Virus record (IMG/VR): IMGVR_UViG_3300034050_000451 | Span: 1-64,000 of that record | Length of the DNA stretch: 64,000 nucleotides | Direction: 5' to 3' (one strand) | Shown: positions 18,698 to 35,200 of the stretch, in pieces | How positions within the stretch are numbered: position 1 is the stretch's first letter | Layout: every line of letters begins with the position of its first letter | The notes under the pieces: model-generated | What the model saw: the letters and a program-made list of their open reading frames with translations, nothing else | The model's database searches: none | Told to the model about the DNA's origin: nothing | Position numbers and translations under genes: made by a program

Positions 18698-21600
18698 TTA
18701 TATTGCGTATGAATTACTTCCTACCTTATTTACCACTCTACCAATTGCGGCTGATACTTTTGTTCCATCCATATAAACACCAACCTTACCAGAACTAAGG
18801 TCAGCTCTTAAACCTTTAATTTCATCTAATAATGCGGTATCACCACCTTCAGCACCGGCTCCTTCTCCACCACCCATTCCTAACATTGAACCAACACCAA
18901 CTGCTATTGCTCCAACAGCAGCTACAGCCATTAAACCAGGCAATGCAGCTATACCAGCTACACCTACTAAAGTCAATGCTCCAGCTAATCCTACTAACGC
19001 AAGAGATAGAGCGGCTATTGGTGCAATGTATTGGAACATTTCTCCAATAACACTACCAACCGTTGACATTGCCGTTATAACACTTGTCAATCCACCACCT
19101 AATGTAGCTAGTGAAGTAGTTATTAAACTTAATCCAGTACCAACCAACATTATACCAGCTCCCACAAGAAGTAAACCAGGTGCGGCAATTAAACCGGCTA
19201 ATCCGAATCCCATCAATGCTAACGATAATGTACCTAATGAAAGTGATAACATAGCAATCGGTCCAGCATATTCAAACATTCCACTCAATACACTTCCTAT
19301 TTGTGGAAGTATTCCTAACACACTTCCTAATCCACCACTTAATGTAGTAAGTGCAGTTGATATTAGTGTTAATCCAGCACCAACCATCATTATACCAGCT
19401 CCCACAAGAAGTAAACCAGGTGCGGCTATTAAACCAGCCATACCAAATCCTATCAATGCGAATGATAGTACCCCCAATGAAAGTGATAACATAGCCATTG
19501 GTCCTACAAATGCGAATATACCAGCCAATACATCTCCGATTTGTGATATTGATGATATTACACTTCCCATAGAACCACCAATTGCGTTAAATCCAGCTGC
19601 GGCAACTAATAAACCAGCACCCAATGTCATCATTGCAATTCCTAATCCAGCTAATGCTAATAAACCAGCTCCAAATATAAATGCTCCTGCACCAGTCATC
19701 ATTAATGAACCTAATGCGAATGCAGCTGCTCCAAATATTACTAAACCAGCTCCAGCTGCTATTACTGAACCAATGTCCAATCCACTTATTAAACTCATTG
19801 CGTATGCAAATGGTACTAATGCTAATCCTAATATTGCTACTGCCAATGCTCCTTTTATCATATCACCTTGTGCTTTTCCTAATACATAAGCAATTGCGGC
19901 CAAACCAGCTACCCCAACTAAACCCTTTCCAACATCTTCCCACTTAACAGTTGCAAATTCTTGGAATGCTTTAGCTGCTACATATAATGCGGCTGCCATA
20001 ATTAACATAGCTGCGGCTCCTTTAATTAAATCATTTGCCTTAATACCCTTACCCATTTTACCCATCTTATCCCCAGCATCGGTATCCGGTGTTTTTATAC
20101 TTTTTGCTTTATCACCAACACCAGCTAAAAGTTTATCTTTAGCTCCACCAGCAACAGCATCAGTAGCACCCCCACCAAATAAACCAGCTACTTTTTGTGC
20201 ACCCATCTTAACTAAGTTCTTTAAGAAATCAGCTGATTTAGTAACTATACCACCCATATCGATGCCCAATGATTTAAACCCTTGGCCAAGTTGACCACTC
20301 ATTGTAATCATCCCACCAAGCCCCTCTAATCCAGTACCTAAATATTTATTTAATCCCATGTTAAGGGTTTCCCCCATAGCACTAAACGTTTCATTTACAG
20401 CAGCACCCATTGTATTGGCATTCTCTTGGTTTGTAGCCATTTTTTCCAATTCTGCAACCGAAACTCCTAATAAATCAGCGGATGCTTTCTTTTGGAAGTA
20501 ATCCATTTTGTTGAATGCTTCAATACCACCTAATGCACTTAAGGTTTCATTCATTGCACCTTGCATATCACCTTCATATGCTAATGCTCTAGCTCTATCT
20601 AAGTTGATATCTTTACCAAGCATTGCACCTAATTCTAATTCCTTAGTAATAGATGATTCGAAATCCAATAGGTTATCAGCAACACCACTAATGGTACTCA
20701 TATTTACACCTAATTTCTTAGCGTATCCTGCTGCTTGTAATATATTTTTACCACCATCTTTTCCAAATAATGCAAACTCTTCAGCTGAACCAGCTAAATC
20801 TGCCATTAAATCGGCAGGTATAATTCCATTTTGGTTTGCAAACTCCTGAGTGGTTTTAATCATATTTGCTGCTATTTCGGTTGAACCACCATTCAACCTT
20901 GCAAATGAACCCATTAATCCAACTGCTTCGGTATTTGTTATACCCATATTAGCAGCTATTAACCCAACATTAGCTTGTGTTTGGAATGTTGCAGCAGATA
21001 CATCTCCGAATTCAGATGCTAATGATTTTACAGTACTAGCAGTATCTTCAAATATAAATCCTAATGCAGTTGCGGATGTAGTTGAAGAGTTCAATCCTTG
21101 TGAGAATGATTGCCCCAACTCTTTATTCATATCACCAAATTTATTGGCGAACGCACCAGTTGCAATTACTAATGCTCCAATAGCTGCTTGAGGTCTTAGT
21201 AAAAATGTTGTTAAGGTTGAACCTAATGCTCCTATTTTTTTCTTTATAGCATCAAACGCAGTTGCCTGTTCTTCTAATATATCTTTTTGTTCTTGTGTTA
21301 GAGATGCCATATCCCTTGCAGCTACAACCTGAGATTCAATGGATGCTTCTATTTGCCCTTGAATACTTAGAAATTGTTTAGCTACATTAGTTCTCTTATC
21401 CAATGCATTAACTTGCTCTTGAATTTGGTCACTAATTGAATTTAATTTATCTTCTAATTCAGCTTTTTGAACAATATCATCAGCGGTTAGTTGAGCTAAC
21501 TCTTTTGCTATCGATGATTGTTCGTTATATTGTGATAATATATCAGTTACAATATCAGATGATGTTTTATTTCTTTCAGAAATTTCACTACCTCTTGCTA

Positions 21601-21907
21601 ATTGGTCTGATACACTAGTTGCTATATCTCTTTGTAATATCGCTTGAGTTCGCATTTCATTAGAAACAGCTGAGTATATTGTACCCAACGATTTAGCTTC
21701 TTGCTCTAATGTAACAGCACCCTGTACTGTTTTATTTTGATTATCAACAAATGTCTTTAAAGTACCTACTATTCCCTCTAATCTACTTTTTAATTTAATA
21801 TAAGTTTCATCCAACTTAGCGGCATCTTTTCCCTGCTCAAGCTGAATTTGCTTAATTTGTTTTAGTATCTCAACTCTTTCTTTAAGTAGACTGTTGCTAT
21901 CTGCCAT
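18698..21907 (-). CDS. tape measure protein
   Basis: 1069 aa, N-terminal coiled coil, Ala/Gly-rich amphipathic and hydrophobic helical repeats; position between tail chaperone and baseplate. Confidence 0.85.
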   Translation of the reverse strand: MADSNSLLKERVEILKQIKQIQLEQGKDAAKLDETYIKLKSRLEGIVGTLKTFVDNQNKTVQGAVTLEQEAKSLGTIYSAVSNEMRTQAILQRDIATSVSDQLARGSEISERNKTSSDIVTDILSQYNEQSSIAKELAQLTADDIVQKAELEDKLNSISDQIQEQVNALDKRTNVAKQFLSIQGQIEASIESQVVAARDMASLTQEQKDILEEQATAFDAIKKKIGALGSTLTTFLLRPQAAIGALVIATGAFANKFGDMNKELGQSFSQGLNSSTTSATALGFIFEDTASTVKSLASEFGDVSAATFQTQANVGLIAANMGITNTEAVGLMGSFARLNGGSTEIAANMIKTTQEFANQNGIIPADLMADLAGSAEEFALFGKDGGKNILQAAGYAKKLGVNMSTISGVADNLLDFESSITKELELGAMLGKDINLDRARALAYEGDMQGAMNETLSALGGIEAFNKMDYFQKKASADLLGVSVAELEKMATNQENANTMGAAVNETFSAMGETLNMGLNKYLGTGLEGLGGMITMSGQLGQGFKSLGIDMGGIVTKSADFLKNLVKMGAQKVAGLFGGGATDAVAGGAKDKLLAGVGDKAKSIKTPDTDAGDKMGKMGKGIKANDLIKGAAAMLIMAAALYVAAKAFQEFATVKWEDVGKGLVGVAGLAAIAYVLGKAQGDMIKGALAVAILGLALVPFAYAMSLISGLDIGSVIAAGAGLVIFGAAAFALGSLMMTGAGAFIFGAGLLALAGLGIAMMTLGAGLLVAAAGFNAIGGSMGSVISSISQIGDVLAGIFAFVGPMAMLSLSLGVLSFALIGFGMAGLIAAPGLLLVGAGIMMVGAGLTLISTALTTLSGGLGSVLGILPQIGSVLSGMFEYAGPIAMLSLSLGTLSLALMGFGLAGLIAAPGLLLVGAGIMLVGTGLSLITTSLATLGGGLTSVITAMSTVGSVIGEMFQYIAPIAALSLALVGLAGALTLVGVAGIAALPGLMAVAAVGAIAVGVGSMLGMGGGEGAGAEGGDTALLDEIKGLRADLSSGKVGVYMDGTKVSAAIGRVVNKVGSNSYAI
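18950..19560 (-). repeat. 240-bp (80-aa) tandem repeat within the tape measure gene
   Basis: attataccagctcccacaagaagtaaaccaggtgcggc recurs exactly 240 nt apart (about 19149 and 19389); protein unit GLIAAPGLLLVGAGIM... Confidence 0.8.
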
Positions 21908-21913
21908 AATTTA

Positions 21914-22108
21914 TTATAAATCCTTAAGAATTTTCTCTAACTCTTTGATTTCTTTTTCAATGGTTGTTAATCTGGCAGTAACGTGAGTAGGAACTCCTTT
22001 CTTTTTGGCTTGTTGTATAAACCTGTCTTGAGTACCCTTTTGAAGGTCATCTAAAAAACGATTTATGAATCCAACAATTGAACCTTCGTTTAAATTTTTC
22101 TTTCCCAT
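21914..22108 (-). CDS. small hypothetical protein
   Basis: 64-aa ORF with a late motif at 22133-22141. Confidence 0.65.
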   Translation of the reverse strand: MGKKNLNEGSIVGFINRFLDDLQKGTQDRFIQQAKKKGVPTHVTARLTTIEKEIKELEKILKDL

Positions 22109-22147: not shown

Positions 22148-22183
22148 AAAAAAAAGTGAGGATTATCTTTTAATCCTCACTTT
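22148..22183 (-). terminator. rho-independent terminator overlapping the stop of the chaperone extension
   Basis: Perfect 13-bp stem AAAGTGAGGATTA / TAATCCTCACTTT, 5-nt loop, followed by a T run on the minus strand. Confidence 0.85.
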
Positions 22184-22378
22184 CGATTGTTGTTGTGCTT
22201 TTTTATGTTCTTCGGATTCTTTCTTTTTTAACTCAATTAATTTGTTAAAATAGAATTTTCTCCATTGTGATGGCATGAAATACACATCATTCCAGCTGAA
22301 TCCATTACCATAATTAACCAACTCCCAAATTTGAGTATGGAGTTGAATACTATAATCACTCGGTAGGGTAAAAAAAGT
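22163..22378 (-). CDS. unannotated +1-frame extension of the tail assembly chaperone (GT-like product)
   Basis: 71 sense codons (TFFTLPSDYSIQLHTQIWELVNYGNGFSWNDVYFMPSQWRKFYFNKLIELKKKESEEHKKAQQQSKVRIKR) starting right after an in-frame TAA, at the U7 run near the end of 22356..23129. Confidence 0.7.
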   Translation of the reverse strand, partial: TFFTLPSDYSIQLHTQIWELVNYGNGFSWNDVYFMPSQWRKFYFNKLIELKKKESEEHKKAQQQSKVRIKR

Positions 22379-23129
22379 TTATCCCAAATGGGATATCTAG
22401 CGCCTCCGTTTCGCCTGTTACATCTGATGTGAAATCAAATTTTAAATCCATATCCGGACTTAACTCCTTAACATATTTTCTAAATGCCTTAGTATCCAAT
22501 GCAAGGAATCCATTTTGAATCCAGCTTGTAACAAACCCTTTATCTTCATTTCCATCAACAGATTGTATCATATATTTCAAACGAGTAGTAACATCAAATG
22601 TTTTTTCTCCCTTTCCTTTATATAATCTTTCTAATGCTTGAATTTCTTTTGTAATTTCAGTTTCATCACCGTGTGTTAGTAATTTAAATACCAACTCTTT
22701 ACCTGATTTTGGTAATTTGAATTTATATCTATTTTCACCATTTAATAGAGATTCATTAACATCTTTAGTTTTCACCTTAGATAAATCAATTGTTACTGAT
22801 TGTTTTTCCAATGTAAATGGGTCAGTAATTTCAACAGTATAATCAGCCCCATAACCTAATACTCTTGTTGCCATTAAAATTGCGTTTTTATCTCCAATAA
22901 ATACATCGTTGATATTAACACCTTCTTCAACAACAATAGATTCGAATAATTTATCCAATACCACACCTTTTTTAATTAAAGTTTGTGATGCAAGGATATC
23001 TTCTTCTCTAGCTGTCATGTATTTGATTTCAATGTTACCCTTTCTTAATGGGTGTTTTTCGGGATACACTAACCCCTTTGATGGTAAATCAATAATTTCC
23101 GTTGGGAAATCGAATTTAGTATTGCTCAT
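22356..23129 (-). CDS. tail assembly chaperone / T4 gp26-like baseplate hub assembly protein
   Basis: IDLPSKGLVYP..IEIKYMTAREEDIL..GDKNAILMATRVLGYG; lies between tube and tape measure; ends IPFGINFF. Confidence 0.75.
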   Translation of the reverse strand: MSNTKFDFPTEIIDLPSKGLVYPEKHPLRKGNIEIKYMTAREEDILASQTLIKKGVVLDKLFESIVVEEGVNINDVFIGDKNAILMATRVLGYGADYTVEITDPFTLEKQSVTIDLSKVKTKDVNESLLNGENRYKFKLPKSGKELVFKLLTHGDETEITKEIQALERLYKGKGEKTFDVTTRLKYMIQSVDGNEDKGFVTSWIQNGFLALDTKAFRKYVKELSPDMDLKFDFTSDVTGETEALDIPFGINFFYPTE

Positions 23130-23177: not shown

Positions 23178-23214
23178 AAAAAAAAAGAGAGATTCTTAAT
23201 AAAAGAACCTCTCT
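23178..23214 (-). terminator. rho-independent terminator after the tail tube gene
   Basis: Minus strand AGAGAGGTTCTT-TTATT-AAGAATCTCTCT followed by a T run. Confidence 0.75.
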
Positions 23215-23240: not shown

Positions 23241-23729
23241 TTAGAATTCTAAAATTGCGTAATCATAAGCCAATGTCAATTCGATATCAGCTGCATCGTT
23301 TGAATCAAATGATAAATCTCCGAAGTTAGCAGATACAATAAATGCTCCTTTTAACTTCCATTGTTCGATTTTATCACCAACAGGCCCTAGCATATAGAAA
23401 TCGATGTCCTTTTTATAGAAATCGGCGTAACCTTTTCTACCAGTTAACGATTCATATCCTAAACGAACCCATTCCATTACTTGTTGTGCTCCAGATGGAA
23501 CGATTGGGTCATACAATGTTATTGTAATGTCCTGCCATTCTCCCTTACCTTGCAATTTGCGATAAGTGTTGATATGGTCTAGTTTAACCGGTTCGAAAGT
23601 GATAGATGGTCTAGCCGCTGATTTTATTAAGTAAGATTGAATTCCGTCAATCTCCATAATATAGCGGTTCTTCATCTTCGGTTCGAAGTTGGTAAACATC
23701 ATTTGTGAAAATTCTAATACTTCTGCCAT
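23241..23729 (-). CDS. gp19: tail tube protein (T4 gp19-like)
   Basis: FEPKMKNRYIMEI..SAARPSI..WQDITITLYD..VMEW..EQWKLKGAF..ANFGDLSF..IELTLAYD. Confidence 0.9.
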   Translation of the reverse strand: MAEVLEFSQMMFTNFEPKMKNRYIMEIDGIQSYLIKSAARPSITFEPVKLDHINTYRKLQGKGEWQDITITLYDPIVPSGAQQVMEWVRLGYESLTGRKGYADFYKKDIDFYMLGPVGDKIEQWKLKGAFIVSANFGDLSFDSNDAADIELTLAYDYAILEF

Positions 23730-23781: not shown

Positions 23782-26118
23782 TTATGCTGAGAAACTTGCT
23801 CCAGTAGGTAAGATATTGAAATCAATTACAATAAATTCAGCAGTTTTTGCTGGTTGTAAGAATATCTGTCCTGCTAAAATGTTTCTATCTACTACATCAG
23901 GTGTGTTGTTAGATTCATCCATAACTACTTTGAATGCGTATAAACCTTGTCTTTGTTGAATTCCTTCTAAGTAAGGTTGTACAGTGTTGATAAATCTACC
24001 ACGAGTTGCTGCGGTATTTTGTTCGAACACTAAGAATCTAGAAGTAGATGCGATATACTTTTTAACGGTAATCAATAATCTTCTTACGTTGATTCTATCC
24101 AATGCTGATGCTTTATCTTGCAACGTTTTTTGTCCAAATGCTACAATACCTTGCCCAGGGAAAGAAGCGATTGGGTTTACTTTGTTTTCATATAAAGTAT
24201 CTCTTTCAGAATGTGTTAATCTATTAAGAACTGAAACAGCTCCTACGATTCCTCCTCTATTCAAACCAGCAGGTGCGAACCATTCAGCCGCAATAGCGTC
24301 ATTTGATGCGTACACAGCAGGTAACAATACTGATGGTGGAACACTTATTAATTTGTTAGTGTTTGAATCAACCATCTTAACCCAAGGGTAGTAAGTACCA
24401 GCGTAGTTTGAATCAACTGCTGCTGCCTGAGTAGTAGCTTGTGCTATTGTATCAGGTGCTGCGTTAAAATCAGCGATGTAGAAACAATCTTGTCTAGCTT
24501 CAACCATATCAATTACTTTAGTAGTAACCGGAGTGTGTAATCTTCTAATAACACCCGGAGTTACAACCATATTGATATCATATTCATCAGCGTTTGAAAT
24601 TGCGTTGATTGCTTTAGAGTATGCCTCATATCCACTAGCTACAGAAGTTGATAAATCAAATCCCTGTGAGTTAGCTGCTGATATTGCCGTTCCTAAGTTA
24701 ATTGGAGTTGCCGGAGATTGTCCGTTAAATCCACCTTGGAAACCTAATATAAATTGTCTCTTAGCCATATCAGTTGAATCAGAACCACTCATTACATAAG
24801 TAAGTTGAGAATCAAATCCGAAATCTACGTTTGCTCCAATTTTAGTAGTTGGTAATGGTGCCAAATAATTAGCGTTATCTAATTTAATACCAATTGTTTC
24901 GAAATCAAAACCAGCAAAATAAATTGGTGAACCAGCAGTATTATCTACTGAACCAGTTTGGAAAACAACAGCAGGTATCCATTCGGCCTGTGTTGTTGTT
25001 GTTGTTTCAATTGGATTAGTATAAGCTCCATGTCCAAATGGTGCTGCTGATACAGGGTATGAACCTTGCTCTTTAACTTCTACTCTAATATATTTTGAGT
25101 TATTCAACCAATCACCATATTCAGTAATTTTACCAGTTGAATCAATTGTCATAAATCTATCACCAATTACTCTAGCTATAAAGTTAGGAGATGCAGGGTC
25201 TAAGTTTACGTTGTTAAATGTTTCTAATACTGATTTTCTCTTATCAGTATCATTGTATGCTCTTACAGATACAGAGAATGTAGAGTAATCAGTTGCTCCA
25301 TCTTCACCAGCTGCTTTCACATTAGAAATACCGATTTTAAATCTTGTGTTTTCGTTGTTACCATATCCTAATGTATGGAAACGGAATAATTCATATCTCT
25401 CACCAGAAATAAGTTGTGATTTTACATAAGGAGTTTGTGCAGGAGATGCTCCAGCTTGCGAAGGTGCTCCTAATCCTAAATCAGTACCACCAAATACTTG
25501 AGATGGTAATGCAATTGCTACAACTGCTCCAGCAGGATTGCTTGTATTGTAATTAAATGCAGATGCTTCATTTTCAAAGTATGAATAAACATATCCATCT
25601 TTTGAACCAAATGGTGATTCACCAAATACATCACTTACATCATTAGTTGCCGATGGAACTAAAGATGATGATACAAAACCAATACCAGAACCAGAAACTA
25701 CAAATGAACCAGATATAGTTAATGATGGTGTTACAGTAAATGGACCAAATCCTACTTCAGCATCACCATTGTTGGTTGAGTGAATAGTAGAGATTAATTT
25801 CTTACCAGCAGAACCACTAGCAACTAAACCAATTGGTGTAGCTTGTGTATATCCTCCGGTATCCATTACCCTTACAACAGTCACAGTACCTGCTTCTCTT
25901 AAATAGTTTTGAACCGCATACTCTGTGTAGTATGTTCCATCAGGTGTTCCGAAAATGTTTTCGAATTCTGATTGTGTTCTTACGATTGTGGGAACAAACG
26001 CAGGTCCTTGTTTGAAAGGTCCTATAAACGCTGCTCCAATTTCTCCGATACCCTGAGCCAAGAACGATAAATCGTTTTCTCTTGTGAATACTCCGGGTGA
26101 TACAATTCTTTCTGCCAT
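23782..26118 (-). CDS. gp18: tail sheath protein (T4 gp18-like)
   Basis: SPGVFTRENDLS..GAAFIGPFKQGP; C-terminal WFAPAGLNRG, LYENKVNPI, FGQKTL..SALDRINVRRL, QPAKTAEFIVIDF. Confidence 0.95.
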   Translation of the reverse strand: MAERIVSPGVFTRENDLSFLAQGIGEIGAAFIGPFKQGPAFVPTIVRTQSEFENIFGTPDGTYYTEYAVQNYLREAGTVTVVRVMDTGGYTQATPIGLVASGSAGKKLISTIHSTNNGDAEVGFGPFTVTPSLTISGSFVVSGSGIGFVSSSLVPSATNDVSDVFGESPFGSKDGYVYSYFENEASAFNYNTSNPAGAVVAIALPSQVFGGTDLGLGAPSQAGASPAQTPYVKSQLISGERYELFRFHTLGYGNNENTRFKIGISNVKAAGEDGATDYSTFSVSVRAYNDTDKRKSVLETFNNVNLDPASPNFIARVIGDRFMTIDSTGKITEYGDWLNNSKYIRVEVKEQGSYPVSAAPFGHGAYTNPIETTTTTQAEWIPAVVFQTGSVDNTAGSPIYFAGFDFETIGIKLDNANYLAPLPTTKIGANVDFGFDSQLTYVMSGSDSTDMAKRQFILGFQGGFNGQSPATPINLGTAISAANSQGFDLSTSVASGYEAYSKAINAISNADEYDINMVVTPGVIRRLHTPVTTKVIDMVEARQDCFYIADFNAAPDTIAQATTQAAAVDSNYAGTYYPWVKMVDSNTNKLISVPPSVLLPAVYASNDAIAAEWFAPAGLNRGGIVGAVSVLNRLTHSERDTLYENKVNPIASFPGQGIVAFGQKTLQDKASALDRINVRRLLITVKKYIASTSRFLVFEQNTAATRGRFINTVQPYLEGIQQRQGLYAFKVVMDESNNTPDVVDRNILAGQIFLQPAKTAEFIVIDFNILPTGASFSA

Positions 26119-26245: not shown

Positions 26246-29200
26246 TTATTTTATCAAAGATTTAATCATTTCTTTTAATTCATCAATTTGTTTTTGCTGA
26301 GAATTGATTATTTCGGTTTGTTCTTTAATACCTTCAACTAAAAGAGGAACTACTTTAGCGTAGTTTACAGTTAAGTAATCTTCTCCAGATTTGGAACCTA
26401 CAATATTATTATTTTTATCAGTTTCCGTATCAAATGGTGCTAATGTCACAATTTCAGGTAAAACTTCTTGTACTTCTTGTGCTGATAAACCTAATTGTCT
26501 TTTTTCGTTTTTGTATCCGAATGATTTTGCTAAATCATTTTCAACATAATAGAATCCATTCAATTTAGAGATTTTATCTAAAGCGTTTTCAATAGAACCA
26601 ACTTTAGTTTTTAATCTTTCATCAGAGTAGTATGCAATAACATCACCCTGTGCGTAAACCCAGTTATAAGAATAAACATAATCATAGTTTGTTCTATTCA
26701 ATCTGGAAGTACCATTCGGAGCCAAATAATATGCAGTATCACTGTTGTGGTAATATACGTTACCATATACTCTATTATTGAAATATGCAATAGGGTTACC
26801 ACTCTCTCGTCCGATATATGCTACGGAAACTGACTGGCCAGTAGTATTATCATGTATTCTTACATATGAGTTTGCATTATTATCATTTGAATCTAATCTT
26901 AAGTTGATATCATTAAATGAGTTAATACTCATCGAATCACTAAACGAACCATTTAAATCAGTAGATGCGATACCATGATTTGAATAAGTGTCATAATTCG
27001 CGTTCCAGTCAAATGACATGTATGCCGTTTTATGGAATGAATTTGACCAAGTACCATATCCCTGTGCTCTACCTTTATTAGTATCTGAACCGAAGTATGT
27101 TGTATCAGTTATGGTTGTATTGAAACGAGATGTTGATGCAAAATCACCATAGTATCCAGAGTTATTACCATCGTAATATATACCACCATAAACTGTACCT
27201 GTTCCGAAATTTGAATAACCAGAATAGTTGTTTGAATTTAGATATCTAACCCATCCGCTGAAACTTCCTCCGGTAATATTTCTTTGATAAATTTCATTTG
27301 CATTATCTTCCCATCCATATGCCAATTGAGTTCCCCAATAGTTACTTGAGTTTGCATGTCTCATATTTACCTGGAACCACCAAGTTCCAGATGGACCACC
27401 ATTATATTTATCTTCACCAAACGTAAATGAACTTATTGGAGTTCGATTGAAATCTGAAACCCAGTTTCCTTCTCCATAACCACTCATATCATTATGAGCT
27501 TTTAATGCAGTCTTAGTTATATTTAAACGAGATGTTGATGCTGGGTCTGCATAATATGCACTATCAGCCGAATCATAATAAATTCCAGCATACATTGCTC
27601 CACTATTTCCATCATTCACATCAAGCATAGGTACAGTTCTCCAAGTACCAGCATTTGGCCAAGATTGACGGAATCGTAAATTTCCAATTGGACCACCTAC
27701 CAACTGCCAACCATATGCACTATTGTATGCATTGGTGTAGTGATATGCTTGAGTACCTACCCAATGTGAAGTACCAGATGGTTGATTTGATGGGTTTGAC
27801 CAAGAATCAATGAATCCACTACCCCATGTCATCATAGTGTTGAAGTCAGTTGTACCCCAACCCATACTTCCAACCCAATAATTAGAGTCGCCCGTATGAA
27901 TAAATCTTGGGATATTGTATTTCCATGTTCCTTTGGTTCCTTCTACTGTTCTTGCGGTAAATCCATTAACGCTGGTGCTTCTATCACCTGCATAATTACC
28001 ATAGTATCCAGTATCATCATTATCATAGAATATAGGTGCCTGAACTGAAGTTCTGAACCAACCACGTGATGATATTGCCGCAAAAGTTGTACCATAGTTC
28101 ATTACCAATAAACCGTGGTCATTTAAGAATCCAGCTTGTCCTCCAGCATTAGGATGTGACCAAGATAATCCATATAAGTTACCAGTACCAGTACCATCAA
28201 TTGCTAATTTATATGCATTACCCATTGCAAATATACCCTGATATCTAACAGATGTATAAACACCTACAATTGATTGTCCATAGTTGTTATCTAAGTAAAG
28301 GTTTTCATTTCCATCAATTCGGATACCACCATTTGCTACTACATATGATAATCTAGCAGTTCCATTAGGGTCTAAATAATATGCAGTATTTGCATAATCA
28401 TAGTAAAGATTAGCTCTTAAATTTTTATTACCACCACCAGGTCCAATGTAAACATCACCACCATCATAATAGTTTAATTCTAACGGGTCACTACCTCTAC
28501 CATTTACAGTATCAGCATATACGTTTCTACCAATGAAACCATAACTCGTATCTCCCGCCCAATATAAATTATCATAATTAATAGCGTTTATACGAGATGT
28601 TGATGCAAAATCACCATAGTATCCCGTATTATCCGAATCATAAAATATTGGTGCTCTTAATGAGTTACCACCCGTAGCGTAGTTGTTAAATAATACGGTA
28701 TTATTTGGATACATTTCCATATTAGTAACTCTAGTACCAGATGTATTTGTATTATAGAAATACAAATCACCACCATCACTAAATCTCATATATGCCTGTC
28801 CGTGTGCGGTATTTATTCTACCAAATCCGTTTGGTGAACCATTATTATTAGTTACGTTATATCCAAATCCACCCCAGTTCCACGTTACACCAGGTTCAGA
28901 TACCCACATTCTTAAATTAATTTCACCTGCACCAGCACCATTGTTTCCAGACAATAATCTAACTCCAATTTGAGAATCCCCATGTCCACCATTTACTTGA
29001 AATGTACCATATAAGTAAGTGTTACTATTGGGGTTCATATAATATGTAGTATCATCTATATCATAGAATATAGTAGCTCTTGATGAACCATATGCGTAAT
29101 GATTACCAGCAGTATCATATCCACCAACTGTTCTACCGGCAGTTTCAGAATACATATGGAATGCATCAGTACTACCTAACAATTGAGTTGATGTACGTTT

Positions 29201-32200
29201 ACCAACATACCAACTACTACCACTACCACCAATATAACGAACCATTGCTTCCCATCCGTTACCAGGGTTTATAGTAAGGTAGGTATGTTTAGCTCCAGTT
29301 AAATTTAAATTATAAAAATTAGATGTTGATGCAGGGTCTGCATAATATCCTGAATCATTTCTATCATAATATATAGTACCATAAATTGGACCTGCTCCAT
29401 CTAATGTGCCACCATTCATATTGATACCACCATACAACCAGTTATAACCAGCTGAATAGATACCAGATGGATGCCAAGATGCGTTTCCAGTTCCACCTAC
29501 GTTACCATTACCTTGATATGAATAAGTTTGTAGAGTATTTAGGTTTGATGCACCATCACCATTTATATAATACGCAGTGTTGGTATCATAATAAATTGGT
29601 GCCCTCATATCCGTATCAGCTCTAAATGTAGGAGCGTATGTATTAGATAATCTAATTTCAGGCGTTATTGCAGTTTGGACTGTACCAAATGATGTTACTA
29701 CTGCTATATTCCAATTTCTAGATTGTGAATCAGCGTTTGAACTTCTAAATCCAGATGTAAAATCAATAACACTAACTACCGGATAACTCCATCCAGTATT
29801 TGTTTCACCTATCCAAACACAATCAACTCCGTCCTGATTACCAAATCTTACAGTATGTGCAGTTGCACTTGCTCCACCTATAAAAGTAGCAGATGAGTTA
29901 TAACCACCTTGGTCATAAGCATAATTACCTAATAGATATTCTGATGTTTGGTTAGTAGAGTAATTATAAATTCGAACCTTCATAGTCCACATAGGGTTAT
30001 TTCCCCTAAATGGTAATTTAATTCTAATAGCTCCAGTAGAACCATCTGATGAAAATGCTGCTCCTTGTGGTGCAGTTATTCGTGTCACAACGTTTGGTGA
30101 TGATGATGAATAACCATCACTACTAAATGCTCCACCTGAATGAACAGTTCCACCTATTCTTAAAGAAATTCCAGTTGTATTAGGGTCTAAATAATACCCA
30201 CTATCATTGTAATCTCTAAATAATGTACCTCTTACTTCTTCAGATGCCACAATTCTAGATGAAATTGCTGCTCTAAATGTACCATTATTGATAATCAATA
30301 AACCGTGGTCATTAAGATTATTAGCTCCACCTAATCCACCTGCGTTTGGATGTGACCAACCAATACCATACATATTTGCCGTTGATGTACCTGCCGTATT
30401 TGGTTTGTATGAATCACCCATAGCAAATACCAATTGTAATCTCTCTGCTGAATAGTTACCAACTATACCTTTTCCGAAATCATCAAATACAATATTTCTA
30501 GCATATGTAATTCTAGTAGTATCTCTCGTATCATGGTAGTGAATTAGGGAATCAGTTCCAGCGAATCTACTATATCTATAAACATTATATCCAGAATCCC
30601 AATACCAATGGTCACCATACCAAGATGATGAATCTTCTCCAAAATAGAAATGAGAATCACCACTATCGGTTGCACCAACTCTTAAAGTATCATTAATATG
30701 AGTTTCATCAGCGTTACCATTTCCTAAATAAGTGTATCCATTTACATATAAATTATTAGTTACCCTAACATGTGCATCACCAGTACCAATTGAGAATATA
30801 AGCGTACCTAAATCTTCAGTATCATAAAAACGAATACCACCATATCCAGGTTGTGCACCCATACGGATACCAGTATGCCATCTTAAATCTAATTTAGTAT
30901 ATGAACCACCATAACCTTCTATATTAGTACCTATGTAATAGTTATCATTTGCATCAGAGTTACCTCCTCCAAAATGTAATCTAGCAGAACCTACTGAATT
31001 GTATGCGTTATTACTAAAGTTACCACCAATTACAACTCTTCCCGCAGTTTGTAAATCATTTAGGTTTGATGTTGATGCTCCATCTATATAATAATTAGTA
31101 TTATTTGCATCATAATAAATTGCTGCAAATAAGTTACCACTACCTCTATTATATCCAAATGCGGGTACAAGGTTTCCATTTAGATAAAGGTCATTTACGT
31201 TCATATAGAAATTACCTCTATCCGTATAGATATGAGCATATGAACTATTTGCAGGTCCTATTTGTATGTATCCAACGTCTGTAGTAAATCTAACACCCCA
31301 ATCACCAGCTCCAGATAATGTAGAATTATTTGCAGATGTACCCAATCTAATTGCGTTTAGTACAGAAGTAGATGCAGGGTCTAAGTAATATCCAGTATTA
31401 TTTTCATCATAGAATGCATATGCGTACATATTGTTAGCAACCAAATTTTCATATGATGTACCCGGATTATTTCTTATTGAAATTCTACCACTTGCTTCCA
31501 TTGTAATATTGGATGCAACTACACCACTCCAATGGAAACCAATTGATGGTGCGTATGCAATGGCCGAACCATTTGCACCACTAGCACCTGCTTCTCTAAT
31601 TTGAAAATGTTGTTGATATGATGTTCCAGCGGTTACACTATATACAGGCGATGCTGCATCAAATGCAATTCCATTCATACGAGATGTTCCTGCTGGATTT
31701 GTATAATACCCAGTATTATCAGAATCGTAGAATATAGGTGAACGCATGTTCCCAGTTGCAGTCAATTCACCACTTTGGTTACCATAAATTACGTTACTAC
31801 CACCTGAATTTCTCCAAATCCAGTCTCCAGCAGCTTGGAAATACCAATTATTAGAATGATATTGAATCTTACCACTAAATTCACCATCCCATGTAGATGA
31901 ATCACTTCTCCAACTACCAACAGTTCTTAACGATGTTGTTGATGTAGGGTCTAAATAATATGATGTATTATTCGAATCATAGAATATAGGTGCTCTAAAA
32001 CTTGCTGCTGCAGTAGCAACACCACTATCATTTACACTAAACTCAACAGTAGTCCAAGCATTATCTACTACTTCTAAATATCTACCTGCACCACCACCTA
32101 ATTGTACAGTTAATACACCGGCTGCTCTATCAGATGCTCTACCAATCCAAGCCTCACCAGTATTAGTTTGAGAATTATTAAATGTACCAACTTGAATTCT

Positions 32201-35200
32201 ACCCTGTAAATTAGCAGAAATTCCATTTGCTCCATTAGATGGGTCTATATAATATGATGTATTATCCGAATCGTAGAATGTTGGTGCAGCAATACCGAAT
32301 TGACCTGAAGTTGGATATACAATACTATCTGCCGTAAAATCGGAAATGTTAGTTGCAGAAGGTGATGTGTTAATATAAACCGCACCAATTGCACTATTTG
32401 TATTGGTAGTAATACTTCGTGTAGTTCTAATAAGAGCATCAACTGATGAGTAATATCTAACATCAACATATACAGGAATGTATCTATGGTCACCACTTAC
32501 AACTACTTCAGAACCAATAGTTACTTGGAAGTGATTTGAACCTATACCATTTGCTTCAACTAATTGAACTGATGCTGCAGAAACATATCCATAAGAAACT
32601 ATATATCTTTTTCTTAAACCTTTATCGTAGTAATTTTCCGAAAGTTCAACTTCAAATAAACCAACAGAGTTCCAATCATTAAAATCAATACCAATTCGTG
32701 CAACTTCAAATCTTCTAGCTTGAGTTGCAGATGCACCTAAGTTATTGATTCCAAAATATTTATAATCACCGATTTGGAAATCATTACCTAAATTTATTGT
32801 ACCATTTACAGTAAGAGTTCCAGCAATATTTAAGTTATTAAGAACAGATGTACTATTTCCATCAATTCTATATGTTGTATCATCCGAATCATAGAAAATT
32901 GGAGAACGCATATCACCTGTTGTTGATATGGTAGTATCCCCACTATGCCACAATCTTCTACCAGTACCCCAAGTTGCAGAATCAAATGCTTGTCTTGAGA
33001 ACCATAGGTTATCACCATACTTATCTCCAACAATTGCGTAACTTTGTTTAACATCACCACCATTATAAGTTGACATCCATAGAACATCATTCCAACTTCC
33101 ACCAAATCCAAGGTTTCCGTTACTAAGCATGGCTACCTTTAACTTACCAGCTCCGAATGTAGCTGAGTTAGGTTTTTCAGTTCCCCCAGATGAATAATGT
33201 CCTCCTAAAAAAGAACCAGCAATATTTCCAGTAGAAGTATATATTCTATGGTCATAATATGTCCCTTGTTGACCATCTAATAAATCTGCATCTAATCCAG
33301 AACCAGCACCATCTGTACTACCTGTCCAAACTTTTTCATTTTCCCAATAAAGAATACCATCAGTACGCATTTCCAAATACTTACCAACAACACCACTAAT
33401 GTGAAAAGCAATACCAGTGGTTGTAGTGCTATATGATTCAGTCCATAAAGCAGCGGTAGTATAATTGTTGTTTGTTTGTGCTTTTCTAAACTGCCCTCTT
33501 ACTGATACTATTTCATTTATATTTGAAGTACTAGCTGCATCTAAATAGTATGCGGTATTATCTGAATCATAAAATATTGGTGTTCTCATGCTTTCAGCTG
33601 AGAAGAATCTACCATTTGTAAACATTGAGTGTCTTATACTCCAAGAAGTACTATCAACGCCAGATGCAAAATAATGTTGTATATCACCACTACCATCCAT
33701 ATGTCTTAACCACATATTATTGGATATAGTATTTCTAAATGTCATAGATGGATACTGTCCTCTAATATTTATTGCACCATCATTAGGAGTAGTGTTAGCC
33801 CAGTTATTTACTAATTGGATATGGCTAAGTACAGAAAGTCCAGCAGGATTTGTATAATATGCAGTATTATCCGTATCATAGAATATAGGTGCCCTCATAT
33901 CTACTTCAGATGCAATCCTTACATTAGAATACCAACCACCATTTGTTAAATTAAGATAAAAATTATTTTCACCTAAGTAATACGCGTTTGATGCTCTAAA
34001 ATTAGTACCTCTTATCGTAGAAAAAGTAACATCATCCGTTGTACGAATGTTTTGGTTCATTAAATGAACTTCAGTTGAACCTTGTCCAGTATCTATCGAT
34101 GTACCACTTATTGTACCATCTGCTATAAAATTACCAGTTCTTAATGTTGGAGTTTTAGTGGATGTTACAGTACCAAATGATGTTGTTTCAAATGATAGAG
34201 CCCAATCACCATCCCATTGAGATACAGCGAAGTTTGAATGTCCACCAATAAACTCAGTAACAACTATTTTAGGGTATGACCAAGTTGTTGCTAATTCACC
34301 GATGAATATTGTACAATAAGTACCATCATGTGCAAATCTAACAGTATATGCAGGTGCCCCAGCTGCCCCAGCAACACTTGCATTTGTATTAATCCAAGAT
34401 GTTGATGGTGAATAATTATATCCACCCATTGAGTATTCCCAATAAGTATCTCCACTATAATTGTAAATACGAACTTTTAACTCCATCATAGTGTTTGTCC
34501 ACGATTGAGGAAGTCGTATCTTTATTGCTCCAGTTACGGATGATGTACTATTATTTAATGTACCTCCATTTGGATATGTTATTTTTAATACACTACCTTG
34601 CTCTTGTGCGAAAGCATTAGCATTTATATAATTTAATCGAGATATATCATTATTAATAAAATATGTAGTGCCACCACCTACATAAATTGTATTACCAGTT
34701 ATATTTGCAAAAGTTACACTATCAGTAGTTCTAACATTTTGGTTCATCAAATGAACTTCGGTTAATCCTTGCCCAGTATTAACTTGAGCTGCTACTAAAT
34801 TACCAGCTAATGTTAATGAGTTTAAGTTTGAAGTACCGGTGTTTAAATAATAAGTTGTATCGAATAAATACATTGTATCAATTCTATCCAACAATAAGTT
34901 ACCAGTTTGTGCTGAGTTTGCTGTAAAAACATTACCCCCTACACCCAATACAATTCTCTTAGATGCGTTTATGAATTTTAATCCTGCCCAACTATTATAA
35001 TCCCAATCATTATTATCAGTAAAACGTAAAGATGATAAGTTTCTCCAAATGGTTTCACCAGTTGAGATACTTGTCATTGTCAATCCATTTGCTGCAAAAT
35101 AATAATCATTACCTGTTGTTGTAAGATTTAGTCTAGCAAATGTTATAGTATCAGATGTACGAACGTTTTGGTTCATCAAATGAACTTCAGTTAATCCTTG

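What the first reader, a model, noticed from the sequence alone, without database searches (positions are those of the whole stretch)
22163..22380. Tail-chaperone extension reachable only by a +1 frameshift at UUU-UUU-U
Seen: the chaperone ends ..AAC TTT TTT TAC CCT ACC GAG TGA. The +1 frame opens exactly there, with an in-frame TAA just upstream, and runs 71 codons of protein-like sequence (LHTQIWELV..GFSWNDVYFMP..RKFYF..KKKE) to a TAA inside a perfect 13-bp terminator. Its first ATG is codon 35. The -1 frame gives a shorter, non-conserved-looking peptide. Established: G/GT-type tail chaperones are usually made by -1 frameshifts (lambda), with -2 in Mu. Inference: P-site tRNA-Phe slips +1 on the U7 run while waiting on TAC. 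A -2 tandem slip is less favoured because the P-site would land on ACT.
Basis: partly seen in the sequence, partly recalled or inferred. Interest (0 to 1): 0.7.

Follow-up and report, generated by a model that had tools for sequence, protein, structure and literature searches.

The report
Conserved +1 frameshift in tail chaperone gene
A lake-water jumbo phage, and over a thousand related phage lineages, appear to make a longer version of a T4 gp26/gp51-type tail-assembly chaperone by letting the ribosome skip one base at a UUU-pyrimidine site, which may explain why phage T4 seemed to lack the usual tail-chaperone frameshift.

Summary

- **The site.** On the minus strand, a 257-aa gene between tail tube and tape measure ends AAC TTT TTT TAC CCT ACC GAG TGA. 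The +1 frame opens at that point and runs 71 codons.
- **Not an assembly error.** About 80 independent metagenome assemblies, and contigs from three lake metagenomes, carry the same T7.
- **Conservation.** In 179 of 181 related loci the extension lies in the +1 frame. It does so too in isolated phages of Flavobacterium, Microcystis, Bacillus, Listeria, Streptococcus and probably Rhodothermus.
- **Coding signal.** Third-position variation switches from frame 0 to frame +1 at the site, upstream of any start codon.
- **No fusions.** No in-frame fusion turned up among the top hits of two very large protein databases.
- **The conserved element.** It is not U7 but an in-frame UUU followed by U or C. 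This context is otherwise avoided in this genome. It is lost in the two IMG/VR loci where the extension has its own ATG.
- **Gene family.** The gene is not a lambda G-type chaperone. It belongs to PF12322, the family of T4 gp26 and gp51.
- **T4 link (tentative).** T4 gp51's C-terminal tail aligns with the extension (P about 0.01, matching helix pattern). T4 may therefore encode the short and long forms as two separate genes.

No protein or reporter evidence exists yet.

The parts
22356..23129 (-). Short form: 257-aa tail/hub assembly chaperone of the T4 gp26/gp51 family (frame 0, stop TGA 22358-22356).
   Evidence: ORF. PF12322 scores 27.1 bits against a cut-off of 24.5, and phrog_150 'baseplate hub' matches. 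Fold matches BFVD 'baseplate hub' proteins, TM up to 0.69/0.88. Sits between tube and tape measure, as in Immuto, Mel-JY01, SP-15, LIS04 and HSE3.
22370..22376 (-). Shift site: U7, read in frame 0 as UUU UUU U(AC). Proposed P-site tRNA-Phe slip from UUU to the overlapping UUU.
   Evidence: Invariant in 80 close loci while flanking codons vary. Every one of 179 loci with a +1 extension has an in-frame UUU-Y inside the permitted window; the 2 IMG/VR loci with an own start have none. UUU-Y is otherwise avoided in this genome (odds ratio 0.15, p 1e-10).
22163..22369 (-). +1-frame extension (68 aa after the shift, then TAA 22165-22163). Together with residues 1-253 it gives a 321-aa long form (P0001).
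   Evidence: Translations. +1-frame codon periodicity runs from the frame-0 stop onward, including the stretch before the first possible start. The domain profile finds 1131 clusters at E<=1e-3, and the top 150 are all small ORFs with arbitrary starts. It is homologous to the extension in Firmicutes phages (hhalign E 4.7e-10). Predicted as three helices.
22379..22381 (-). TAA in the +1 frame. It closes that frame immediately 5' of the shift site and limits the shift window to 7 codons.
   Evidence: 20-nt window.
22380..22395 (-). Small hairpin TATCCC-ATTT-GGGATA ending 3 nt 5' of the U7 run. Candidate +1 stimulator and -1 attenuator (inferred).
   Evidence: dG -7.6 kcal/mol, z -3.6, 1 of 200 shuffles as stable. 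A hairpin ends 0-4 nt before the first Phe codon in 53 of 73 unique loci, and different clades use different sequences. It is weak or absent in some clades (Immuto z +0.1). Published precedent: PMC6321510, PMC3639245.
22403..22407 (-). GGAGG tract 26 nt 5' of the U7 run. Role unknown.
   Evidence: Invariant in 32 unique clade sequences, including two third-codon positions and the rare GAG codon. A purine-rich G tract occurs at this place in other clades with different amino acids. Only 8 of 31 genes in the window have an SD-like core upstream.
22152..22184 (-). Intrinsic-terminator-like hairpin (14 bp plus T8) overlapping the end of the extension ORF.
   Evidence: dG -17.7 kcal/mol, z -4.97.
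23241..23729 (-). Tail tube protein (T4 gp19 family), immediately upstream. This is the context that defines the chaperone position.
   Evidence: PF06841 and phrog_4542.
18698..21907 (-). Tape-measure-like protein (1069 aa), downstream.
   Evidence: ORF. The syntenic genes in Immuto, LIS04 and HSE3 are annotated as tape measure. No Pfam or PHROG hit of its own.

Best explanation
The gene between tail tube and tape measure encodes a tail/hub assembly chaperone of the T4 gp26/gp51 family, made in two forms.

- Most ribosomes stop at TGA and make the 257-aa short form.
- A fraction shift +1 when peptidyl-tRNA-Phe (anticodon GAA) sits on an in-frame UUU that is followed by a pyrimidine (here UUU UUU U). 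The tRNA re-pairs one base downstream.
- Translation then continues ACC CTA CCG... and gives a 321-aa long form (...GINFF-TLPSDY...) with a 68-aa three-helix C-terminal domain.
- A small hairpin abutting the E site may favour the forward slip and oppose a backward one.

By analogy with lambda G/GT and T4 gp26/gp51, the shared N-terminal domain and the extra C-terminal domain would act together, at a fixed ratio, in building the hub/tape-measure/tube initiation complex. Neither form would be part of the virion.

What is shown: the sequence is real, the +1 frame is coding from the site onward, and the frame offset and the UUU-Y motif are conserved.

What is inferred: the shift itself, its site to the codon, its efficiency, the role of the hairpin and the assembly function.
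For: Sequence and frames.

The sequence is real:
- 80 independent IMG/VR assemblies carry T7 and the +1 offset.
- Contigs of three independent lake metagenomes match with 0 differences and 0 gaps.

Conservation of the frame offset:
- 179 of 181 loci have the extension in the +1 frame.
- So do Immuto, Mel-JY01, SP-15, GXN1, LIS04, HSE3 and the huge phage LR756508. In these the -1 frame is closed where it was checked.
- In Rhodothermus RM378 the +1 frame is likewise open after TTT TTT T, but homology of that ORF to the extension was not tested on its own.

The +1 frame is coding:
- Third-position entropy switches from frame 0 (0.76) to frame +1 (0.71) at the site.
- It is 0.72 even in the stretch before the first possible start. 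That codon is not conserved: TTG 16, ATG 7, CTG 3, CTT 3.

The slip motif:
- UUU-Y lies inside the permitted window in 179 of 179 loci, and in 0 of the 2 IMG/VR loci with an own start.
- UUU-Y is avoided elsewhere: 22 of 162 TTT codons against 50 of 98 TTC codons precede a Y-initial codon, p 1e-10.

No alternative source of the long form:
- No in-frame fusion among proteins sharing words with the extension in 5.8 billion clusters.
- None among the top 150 of 1131 clusters matching the extension profile.
- The 270,865-bp genome holds only one PF12322 gene.

Family and context.

Hairpin. Published work shows that an upstream hairpin next to the E site stimulates +1 and attenuates -1 shifting on 70S ribosomes (PMC6321510).

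That UUU-pyrimidine sites are prone to +1 shifts in E. coli is my own recollection (Schwartz and Curran, NAR 1997).
Against: - No protein, ribosome-profiling or reporter data exist. The only RNA run found holds a relative and does not cover the site.
- No classical +1 stimulator is present. The frame-0 A-site codon is a sense codon (UAC or UGG). The GGAGG tract lies 26 nt upstream, not 3.
- No downstream structure is supported by covariation.
- The hairpin is weak or absent in some clades. It is partly explained by conserved Pro and Gly codons.
- In three lineages the extension domain is a separate gene with its own ATG. Covalent fusion is therefore not always required for function.
- +1 and -2 shifts, and loss of one U during transcription, give nearly the same product. 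Sequence alone cannot separate them.
Confidence: 0.8

Rival explanations
1. The extension is translated on its own. Initiation would be at the internal TTG (codon 20 of the +1 ORF) or at a non-canonical codon, perhaps helped by the upstream GGAGG plus hairpin acting as a split ribosome-binding site, as described for T4 genes 25 and 38 (own knowledge).
For: A GGAGG, a hairpin and then the start of the +1 ORF resemble a split SD. Three lineages do express the domain from its own ATG. Gene callers annotate small ORFs here.
Against: The +1 frame has no ATG, GTG, TTG, CTG or ATN codon between its opening TAA and codon 11. The TTG codon is CTT in some clade members. The 20 codons upstream of it are conserved with +1-frame periodicity and form the most conserved N-terminal part of the domain family. 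Called ORFs start at arbitrary places, 60 of 150 inside the domain. This genome hardly uses SD sequences.
Confidence: 0.07
2. RNA polymerase slips on the T7 run. A fraction of mRNAs lacks one U (or gains two), which puts the two ORFs in one frame. The ribosome reads normally.
For: A seven-base homopolymer is present and invariant in the window's clade. A hairpin followed by a U run resembles a pause or terminator signal.
Against: Related clades keep the +1 arrangement with runs of only 3-4 U (TTT CTT T, TTT CTA T, TTC TTT T). Slippage is not expected on these. Known productive slippage sites usually have 9 or more identical bases (own knowledge). No RNA reads cover the site.
Confidence: 0.05
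3. The shift is -2 rather than +1: P-site tRNA-Phe slips back two bases on the U run, as in phage Mu. This would give ...NFFF-TLP... with one extra Phe.
For: -2 reaches the same frame, and U7 allows perfect re-pairing two bases back. PRFect notes that -2 shifts on GUU_UUU present as +1 (PMC10885494).
Against: In the variants TTT CTT T, TTT CTA T and TTC TTT T, a -2 slip gives no acceptable re-pairing, while +1 from UUU to UUY always does. No downstream stimulatory structure is supported.
Confidence: 0.05
4. The frame break is an artefact (a homopolymer miscall) or a recent inactivating mutation. The real gene would be one continuous 321-aa ORF, or the tail would be a dead remnant.
For: Homopolymers are error-prone. 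T6 would fuse the frames.
Against: The same T7 and offset appear in about 80 independent assemblies and in three metagenome contig sets. The offset is conserved in 179 of 181 loci down to about 25% protein identity and in isolate genomes. No continuous ORF turned up in huge protein databases. The extension is under purifying selection.
Confidence: 0.01

Closest known systems
Lambda G/GT-type tail assembly chaperone frameshift (Levin 1993; Xu, Hendrix and Duda 2004; reviewed in PMC5009743)
   Same: Two overlapping ORFs lie between the tail tube gene and the tape-measure gene. A short form and a C-terminally extended long form come from one start. The slippery site sits just before the stop. The arrangement is conserved although the sequences diverge.
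   Different: The direction is +1 at UUU-Y, not -1 at G GGA AAG. The protein belongs to another family (PF12322), with no match to any lambda-type chaperone model. The short form is about 250 aa rather than about 140. Function, ratio and absence from virions are untested here.
+1 or -2 variants of the tail chaperone frameshift: Mu (-2), haloarchaeal myovirus HSTV-2 ('very likely +1', PMC5009743), 350 forward shifts annotated in SEA-PHAGES actinophages (PMC10885494)
   Same: The second ORF lies in the +1 frame relative to the first. The shift is inferred mostly from comparative genomics.
   Different: The protein family and host range differ: aquatic Bacteroidota and cyanobacterial phages, jumbo phages and Firmicutes myoviruses. 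The motif (UUU followed by a pyrimidine) is conserved across more than 1000 clusters. An upstream hairpin may take part.
T4 gp26 and gp51 ('hub assembly chaperones', PMC3004832)
   Same: Same Pfam family. T4 gp26 (208 aa) ends ...EFFELL, much as the short form ends ...NFFYPTE. T4 gp51 (249 aa) continues in frame with a tail of about 45 aa. That tail aligns with the +1 extension (hhalign P about 0.01; 2 of 300 column shuffles reach the score). It has the same long-short-long helix pattern after the same beta-hairpin. gp51 is needed for assembly but is absent from the particle.
   Different: T4 uses two separate paralogous genes, with no frameshift, in the hub gene cluster rather than between tube and tape measure. 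The tail homology is statistically weak. It was not detectable from the Firmicutes-type extension or by HMM search.
prfB (RF2) +1 frameshift, CUU UGA C
   Same: The P-site tRNA re-pairs one base downstream on a U-rich site. The variant TTT CTT T of this family even contains CUU-U. An upstream duplex next to the E site is a plausible stimulator (PMC6321510).
   Different: There is no stop codon in the A site. There is no SD 3 nt upstream (GGAGG is 26 nt away). The purpose is to make two products, not autoregulation.
Listeria phage PSA, A118 and A500 structural-gene +1 frameshifts (CCC_UGA; PMC5009743)
   Same: A programmed +1 shift in a phage structural module yields a C-terminally extended second product.
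   Different: Those shifts occur on a Pro codon next to a stop or pseudoknot, in capsid and tail-shaft genes whose products are in the virion.

Membership tests
Frameshift-coupled tail assembly chaperone pair (G/GT type, Xu et al. 2004) | Two overlapping ORFs located between the major tail/tube gene and the tape-measure gene | tested here: met
   Order is sheath, tube, 257-aa ORF, +1 ORF, (64-aa ORF), tape measure. The same order holds in Immuto, Mel-JY01, SP-15, LIS04 and HSE3.
Frameshift-coupled tail assembly chaperone pair (G/GT type, Xu et al. 2004) | A conserved slippery sequence in the overlap, and a second ORF without its own conserved start | tested here: met
   UUU-Y in 179 of 179 loci. 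No conserved start.
Frameshift-coupled tail assembly chaperone pair (G/GT type, Xu et al. 2004) | -1 direction on an X XXY YYZ heptamer (the usual case) | tested here: not met
   The extension is in the +1 frame. The -1 frame is closed in distant relatives.
Frameshift-coupled tail assembly chaperone pair (G/GT type, Xu et al. 2004) | Sequence or fold homology to lambda gpG or other described tail-chaperone families | tested here: not met
   Pfam and PHROGs give only PF12322 and 'baseplate hub'. No PDB or Swiss-Prot-AFDB fold match.
Frameshift-coupled tail assembly chaperone pair (G/GT type, Xu et al. 2004) | Both products made at a fixed ratio, needed for tail assembly and absent from virions | not testable with these tools
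   Needs proteomics and genetics.
PF12322 T4_baseplate (T4 gp26/gp51) | Score above Pfam's gathering cut-off | tested here: met
   27.1 bits against 24.5. 25.9 bits in the whole-genome scan. T4 gp26 scores 215.6 and gp51 177.5 bits.
PF12322 T4_baseplate (T4 gp26/gp51) | The same fold as other family members | tested here: met
   The AF2 model (pLDDT 88.6) matches 65 BFVD proteins at E<=1e-3. Those that carry a name are 'baseplate hub subunit/assembly protein'; several are unnamed or 'uncharacterized'. SP-15 gives TM 0.68/0.88.
gp51-type long form (PF12322 domain plus C-terminal tail) | The C-terminal tail is homologous to the gp51 tail | tested here: inconclusive
   hhalign P 0.011-0.014, at the expected position and collinear through the junction. 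Empirical null: 2 of 300. Matching helix pattern. However, HMM search is not significant and the Firmicutes-type extension gives no hit.
prfB-type +1 frameshift | Slow A-site codon (stop) and an SD 3 nt upstream of the slip codon | tested here: not met
   The A-site codon is UAC, UGG or CUU. GGAGG lies 26 nt upstream.

The most novel reading that the evidence does not exclude
PF12322 proteins are the tail/tape-measure assembly chaperones of the whole T4-like and jumbo myovirus radiation. Their short-form/long-form logic would be ancestral and realised in three interchangeable genetic ways:
- a UUU-Y +1 ribosomal frameshift (most lineages, more than 1000 clusters);
- a separate small gene for the extension domain (a few lineages);
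- two paralogous genes (T4 gp26 as the short form and gp51 as the long form).

This would explain why T4 is the textbook exception to the conserved tail-chaperone frameshift. It would also assign a concrete role to gp26 and gp51. A short hairpin abutting the E site would be a natural +1 stimulator in hosts that make little use of SD pairing.
Probability: 0.45. Interest if true: 0.78.

Novelty: new variant of a known kind. Interest (0 to 1): 0.62.

Why it matters
- **Annotation.** The long form is missing from every GenBank record inspected (Immuto, Mel-JY01, SP-15, LIS04, HSE3, RM378). It is also missing from the metagenomic protein catalogues, where more than 1000 clusters of meaningless small ORFs stand in for it.
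- **Recoding.** The family offers a large natural data set for a poorly documented type of bacterial +1 frameshift. It has a sense codon in the A site, a UUU-pyrimidine slip and possibly an upstream hairpin. Some of its hosts (Bacteroidota) make little use of SD pairing.
- **Phage assembly.** It ties the enigmatic T4 hub 'catalysts' gp26 and gp51 to the general short/long chaperone principle. It also suggests direct experiments in T4.

Tried and rejected
- **Structure search.** The long-form model found nothing in PDB or in Swiss-Prot AlphaFold models. Viral proteins are not in that AFDB library.
- **Downstream RNA structure.** RNAalifold on 32 clade sequences gave only invariant pairs and a covariation term of -1.26. 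No stimulator can be claimed there.
- **gp51 tail.** HMM search of the gp51 tail against three-frame translations was not significant (best E 0.085), although the top 21 hits were all in the +1 frame. The Firmicutes-type extension profile against gp51 gave no hit. BLASTP of the long form against gp51 gave nothing.
- **Binding test.** Complex prediction of the tail tube protein with the extension domain gave no verdict (score 0.00). It is not evidence either way.
- **Reads.** Only assembler contigs, not raw reads, were available for the DNA runs. The one metatranscriptome holds a relative and does not reach the site. Transcript-level slippage could therefore not be tested.
- **More Firmicutes loci.** The search for related loci with the SP-15 protein found only SP-15 itself.
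- **Literature.** Searches on gp26, gp51, frameshift, tail assembly chaperone and PF12322 found no description of this frameshift. Subscription journals are not covered.
Full report
**1. What is there.** All genes in this part of the window are on the minus strand. Reading that strand, the order is:
- tail sheath (23782-26118);
- tail tube (23241-23729, T4 gp19 family);
- a 257-aa ORF (22356-23129);
- a 64-aa ORF (21914-22108);
- a 1069-aa tape-measure-like protein (18698-21907).

The 257-aa ORF ends GGG ATA AAC TTT TTT TAC CCT ACC GAG TGA. In the +1 frame a TAA (22381-22379) lies just before the U run. The frame is then open for 71 codons, down to a TAA at 22165-22163. That stop lies inside a strong terminator-like hairpin (14 bp, dG -17.7 kcal/mol, z -5, then T8). 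The first ATG of the +1 ORF is codon 35, and the first possible start of any kind is a TTG at codon 20. The stem has 14 pairs, not 13. The -1 frame is also open here, for about 52 codons.

**2. Not an assembly error.**
- A scan of IMG/VR with the 257-aa protein returned 80 loci from different metagenomes with 79-100% identity. All have the extension one base forward of the chaperone frame.
- All have TTT TTT TAC CCT, while the codons before it (AAC, GGG, TCG, AGC, GGA) and after it (ACC, TCC, GCC) vary.
- Nineteen lake-water metagenome runs hold the stretch. Contigs from three of them were laid on it and show no difference and no gap at the site. These are assembler contigs, not raw reads.
- The window belongs to a 270,865-bp virus record rated complete, with a single gene of this family.

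**3. The +1 frame is translated from the site onward.**
- Among 36 unique sequences of the clade, variability sits at frame-0 third positions upstream of the site (entropy 0.25, 0.19, 0.76). It sits at +1-frame third positions downstream of the frame-0 stop (0.28, 0.15, 0.71 in +1-frame order).
- The same holds for the 31 nt between the frame-0 stop and the TTG codon (0.33, 0.14, 0.72). That codon is TTG, ATG, CTG or CTT in different members.
- So conserved protein is encoded upstream of any start codon.

**4. How far the arrangement reaches.**
- With the Flavobacterium phage Immuto protein and a huge-phage protein as further queries, I collected 181 loci in which the chaperone stop is present. 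In 179 the extension domain is in the +1 frame.
- A +1-frame ORF also follows the gene in isolated phages. Their GenBank records annotate nothing there, or only a truncated 'hypothetical protein': Immuto (Flavobacterium), Mel-JY01 (Microcystis), RM378 (Rhodothermus), SP-15 and HSE3 (Bacillus), LIS04 (Listeria) and GXN1 (Streptococcus). In these the -1 frame is closed within a few codons.
- The aquatic-type and Firmicutes-type extensions are homologous (hhalign E 4.7e-10, probability 96.7%). The RM378 ORF was included in that alignment, but its homology was not tested on its own.
- A profile of the extension finds 1131 clusters (50% identity) at E<=1e-3 among 1.84 billion representatives. The best 150 are all short ORFs. 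Their called starts are arbitrary: 90 begin upstream of the F-F-G-L junction in +1-frame 'junk', and 60 begin inside the domain.
- A search of 5.8 billion clusters for proteins of 176-560 aa sharing words with the extension found none.
- In-frame fusions therefore did not turn up among relatives of this family within reach of these searches.

**5. The conserved signal.** U7 is specific to the window's clade. Other clades have TTT TTT TGG, TTT CTT TGG, TTT CTA TGG, TTC TTT TGG, TTT CTA TTC, TTT TTT CAC, TTC TTT CGT or TTT TTT AGT.
- The common denominator is an in-frame UUU followed by U or C. It lies within the window bounded by the +1-frame stop upstream and the frame-0 stop downstream. That window can be as short as 20 nt.
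- The motif is present in 179 of 179 loci.
- tRNA-Phe (anticodon GAA) can re-pair perfectly one base downstream on UUU or UUC. A -2 slip would not re-pair in the interrupted variants.
- All variants give products of the same length, x-F-[F/Y]-[G/T/S]-L.
- Two IMG/VR loci (L173, L179) carry the extension in another frame, with its own ATG and a 25-aa leader. In both the UUU-Y motif has decayed (TTC TTG TAT; TTC CTT TGG). A third such case is the huge phage LR756511, where the ATG overlaps the chaperone stop (TAATG); it still has TTT TTC, but its +1 frame is closed.
- In this genome UUU-Y is avoided. In six structural genes, 22 of 162 TTT codons away from the site precede a Y-initial codon, against 50 of 98 TTC codons (odds ratio 0.15, p 1e-10). 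The only two UUU-Y in the chaperone gene are the two at the site.
- That UUU-pyrimidine is a +1-prone context in E. coli is established knowledge as I recall it (Schwartz and Curran 1997). I did not read that paper here.

**6. Possible stimulators.**
- No downstream structure is supported. There is no stop or obviously starved codon in the A site. UAC is the minor Tyr codon (22%), but ACC, the +1 codon, is also minor.
- Immediately upstream lies a small hairpin (22395-22380, TATCCC-ATTT-GGGATA, dG -7.6 kcal/mol, z -3.6). It ends 3 nt before the first UUU.
- Across 79 unique loci, the 30 nt upstream fold better than other windows of the same gene (mean -6.3 against -2.05 kcal/mol). In 53 of 73 the hairpin ends 0-4 nt before the first Phe codon. 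Different clades use different sequences and even different amino acids (I-P-F-G, I-P-I-T, P-L-D-A).
- Against dinucleotide shuffles the signal is strong in some clades (z -3.2 to -3.7) and absent in others (Immuto +0.1). It is a candidate, not a demonstrated element.
- Published work shows that a hairpin juxtaposed to the E site stimulates +1 and attenuates -1 frameshifting on 70S ribosomes, mimicking the prfB SD duplex (PMC6321510; PMC3639245).
- Further upstream (22407-22403) a GGAGG is invariant in the clade, including two third-codon positions and a rare GAG codon. A comparable G-rich tract occurs in other clades. At 26 nt it is too far for a prfB-like effect. Its role is unexplained.

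**7. What the protein is.**
- It is not related to lambda gpG. It matches PF12322 (27.1 bits, cut-off 24.5) and PHROG 150 'baseplate hub'.
- Its AF2 model (pLDDT 88.6) matches 65 BFVD proteins, among them many annotated 'baseplate hub subunit/assembly protein'.
- PF12322 is the family of both T4 gp26 (208 aa) and T4 gp51 (249 aa). The T4 tail review lists both as 'hub assembly chaperones'. gp51 is essential but absent from the particle (PMC3004832).
- The recoding review states that the G-T frameshift is conserved among long-tailed phages 'except T4' (PMC5009743).

**8. The T4 connection (hypothesis).**
- gp26 ends ...EFFELL right after the family domain, as the short form ends ...NFFYPTE. gp51 continues in frame for about 45 residues.
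- Profile-profile comparison aligns the extension (positions 3-46 or 3-53) with gp51 residues 204-244 or 205-252, with P 0.011-0.014.
- A full-length comparison is collinear through the junction.
- Only 2 of 300 column-shuffled extension profiles reach the observed score.
- The AF2 models show the same order of elements. The window long form has a beta-hairpin, a short helix, then helices 257-273, 279-284 and 287-320. The gp51 homologue has a beta-hairpin, helix 196-203, then helices 208-221, 226-230 and 234-249.
- Against this, an HMM search is not significant and the Firmicutes-type extension does not hit gp51.
- I put about 55-60% on the gp51 tail being homologous to the extension. If so, T4 encodes the short and long forms as two paralogous genes. 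My odds for the broader reading given in the section on the most novel reading, which adds further claims, are lower (0.45).

**9. Comparison with known systems and novelty.**
- The logic (short and long chaperone from one start, between tube and tape measure) is that of lambda G/GT.
- The +1 direction has precedents: HSTV-2, and many annotated actinophage cases (PMC5009743, PMC10885494).
- New here are the protein family, the conserved UUU-Y motif over a very large and diverse set of myoviruses and jumbo phages, the possible E-site-adjacent hairpin, and the link to T4 gp26/gp51.
- I found no description of any of this in the searchable literature. That literature excludes most subscription journals.
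- I class it as a new variant of a known kind.

**10. Limits.** There is no direct evidence that the long form is made, no efficiency estimate and no test of function. +1, -2 and transcriptional loss of one U cannot be separated without the junction peptide and RNA reads. The comparative data favour a ribosomal +1 slip.

Noticed in passing
window 22403-22407 (minus strand): GGAGG lies 26 nt upstream of the shift site. It is invariant in 32 unique clade sequences, including two third-codon positions. Only 8 of 31 genes in the window have any SD-like core. Similar G-rich tracts occur at the same place in other clades over different amino acids. Its function is unknown.
   Followed up: partly
window 22152-22184 and 23186-23214 (minus strand): Two strong terminator-like hairpins flank the chaperone gene. 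One lies between tube and chaperone, as annotated in Bacillus phage SP-15. The other overlaps the stop of the +1 extension, before the 64-aa ORF and the tape measure. They may set the relative dosage of tube, chaperone and tape measure transcripts.
   Followed up: partly
window 21914-22108 (minus strand): A 64-aa, probably helical ORF sits between the extension and the tape measure. Mel-JY01 has a 71-aa ORF in the same place. It has no significant family match, only weak prefoldin-like hits.
   Followed up: no
window 26246-38029 (minus strand): A giant 3927-aa ORF carries a long collagen-like G-[TS]-S-G repeat region near its N-terminus and many repeated modules. It is probably a fibre or decoration protein of this 271-kb phage.
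   Followed up: no
window 18698-21907 (minus strand): The C-terminal half of the tape-measure-like protein consists of repeated, very hydrophobic Gly/Ala/Leu-rich segments that look like multiple membrane-spanning stretches.
   Followed up: no
whole window, coding strand: Phe codon choice depends on the next base. TTT is rarely followed by a T/C-initial codon (22 of 162), while TTC often is (50 of 98; p 1e-10). This fits genome-wide avoidance of the frameshift-prone UUU-pyrimidine context.
   Followed up: yes
L173:2217-2552, L179:2214-2513, L193:2121-2393: In three lineages the extension domain is a stand-alone gene with its own ATG at or overlapping the chaperone stop. It carries an added N-terminal leader of about 25 aa in L173 and L179. 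The domain can therefore work without being fused.
   Followed up: partly
window 22206-22370 (minus strand, -1 frame): The -1 frame after the U run is open for about 52 codons in all 36 unique clade sequences, and encodes a hydrophobic Cys/Met-rich peptide. It shows no coding periodicity and is closed in other clades. It is probably a by-product of constraint on the +1 frame, but a minor -1 product is not excluded.
   Followed up: partly
window 22362-22391: In two of three metagenome runs the assembler's contigs break exactly here, and word depth doubles. The roughly 30-nt stretch around the shift site is shared by several co-occurring strains, which illustrates its nucleotide-level conservation.
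   Followed up: no
proteins P0124-P0215 (T4 gp51 homologues): The database annotates a second Pfam family, PF28602, on gp51 homologues. It is not in the local Pfam copy. It probably covers the gp51 C-terminal tail and should be scanned against the +1 extension.
   Followed up: no
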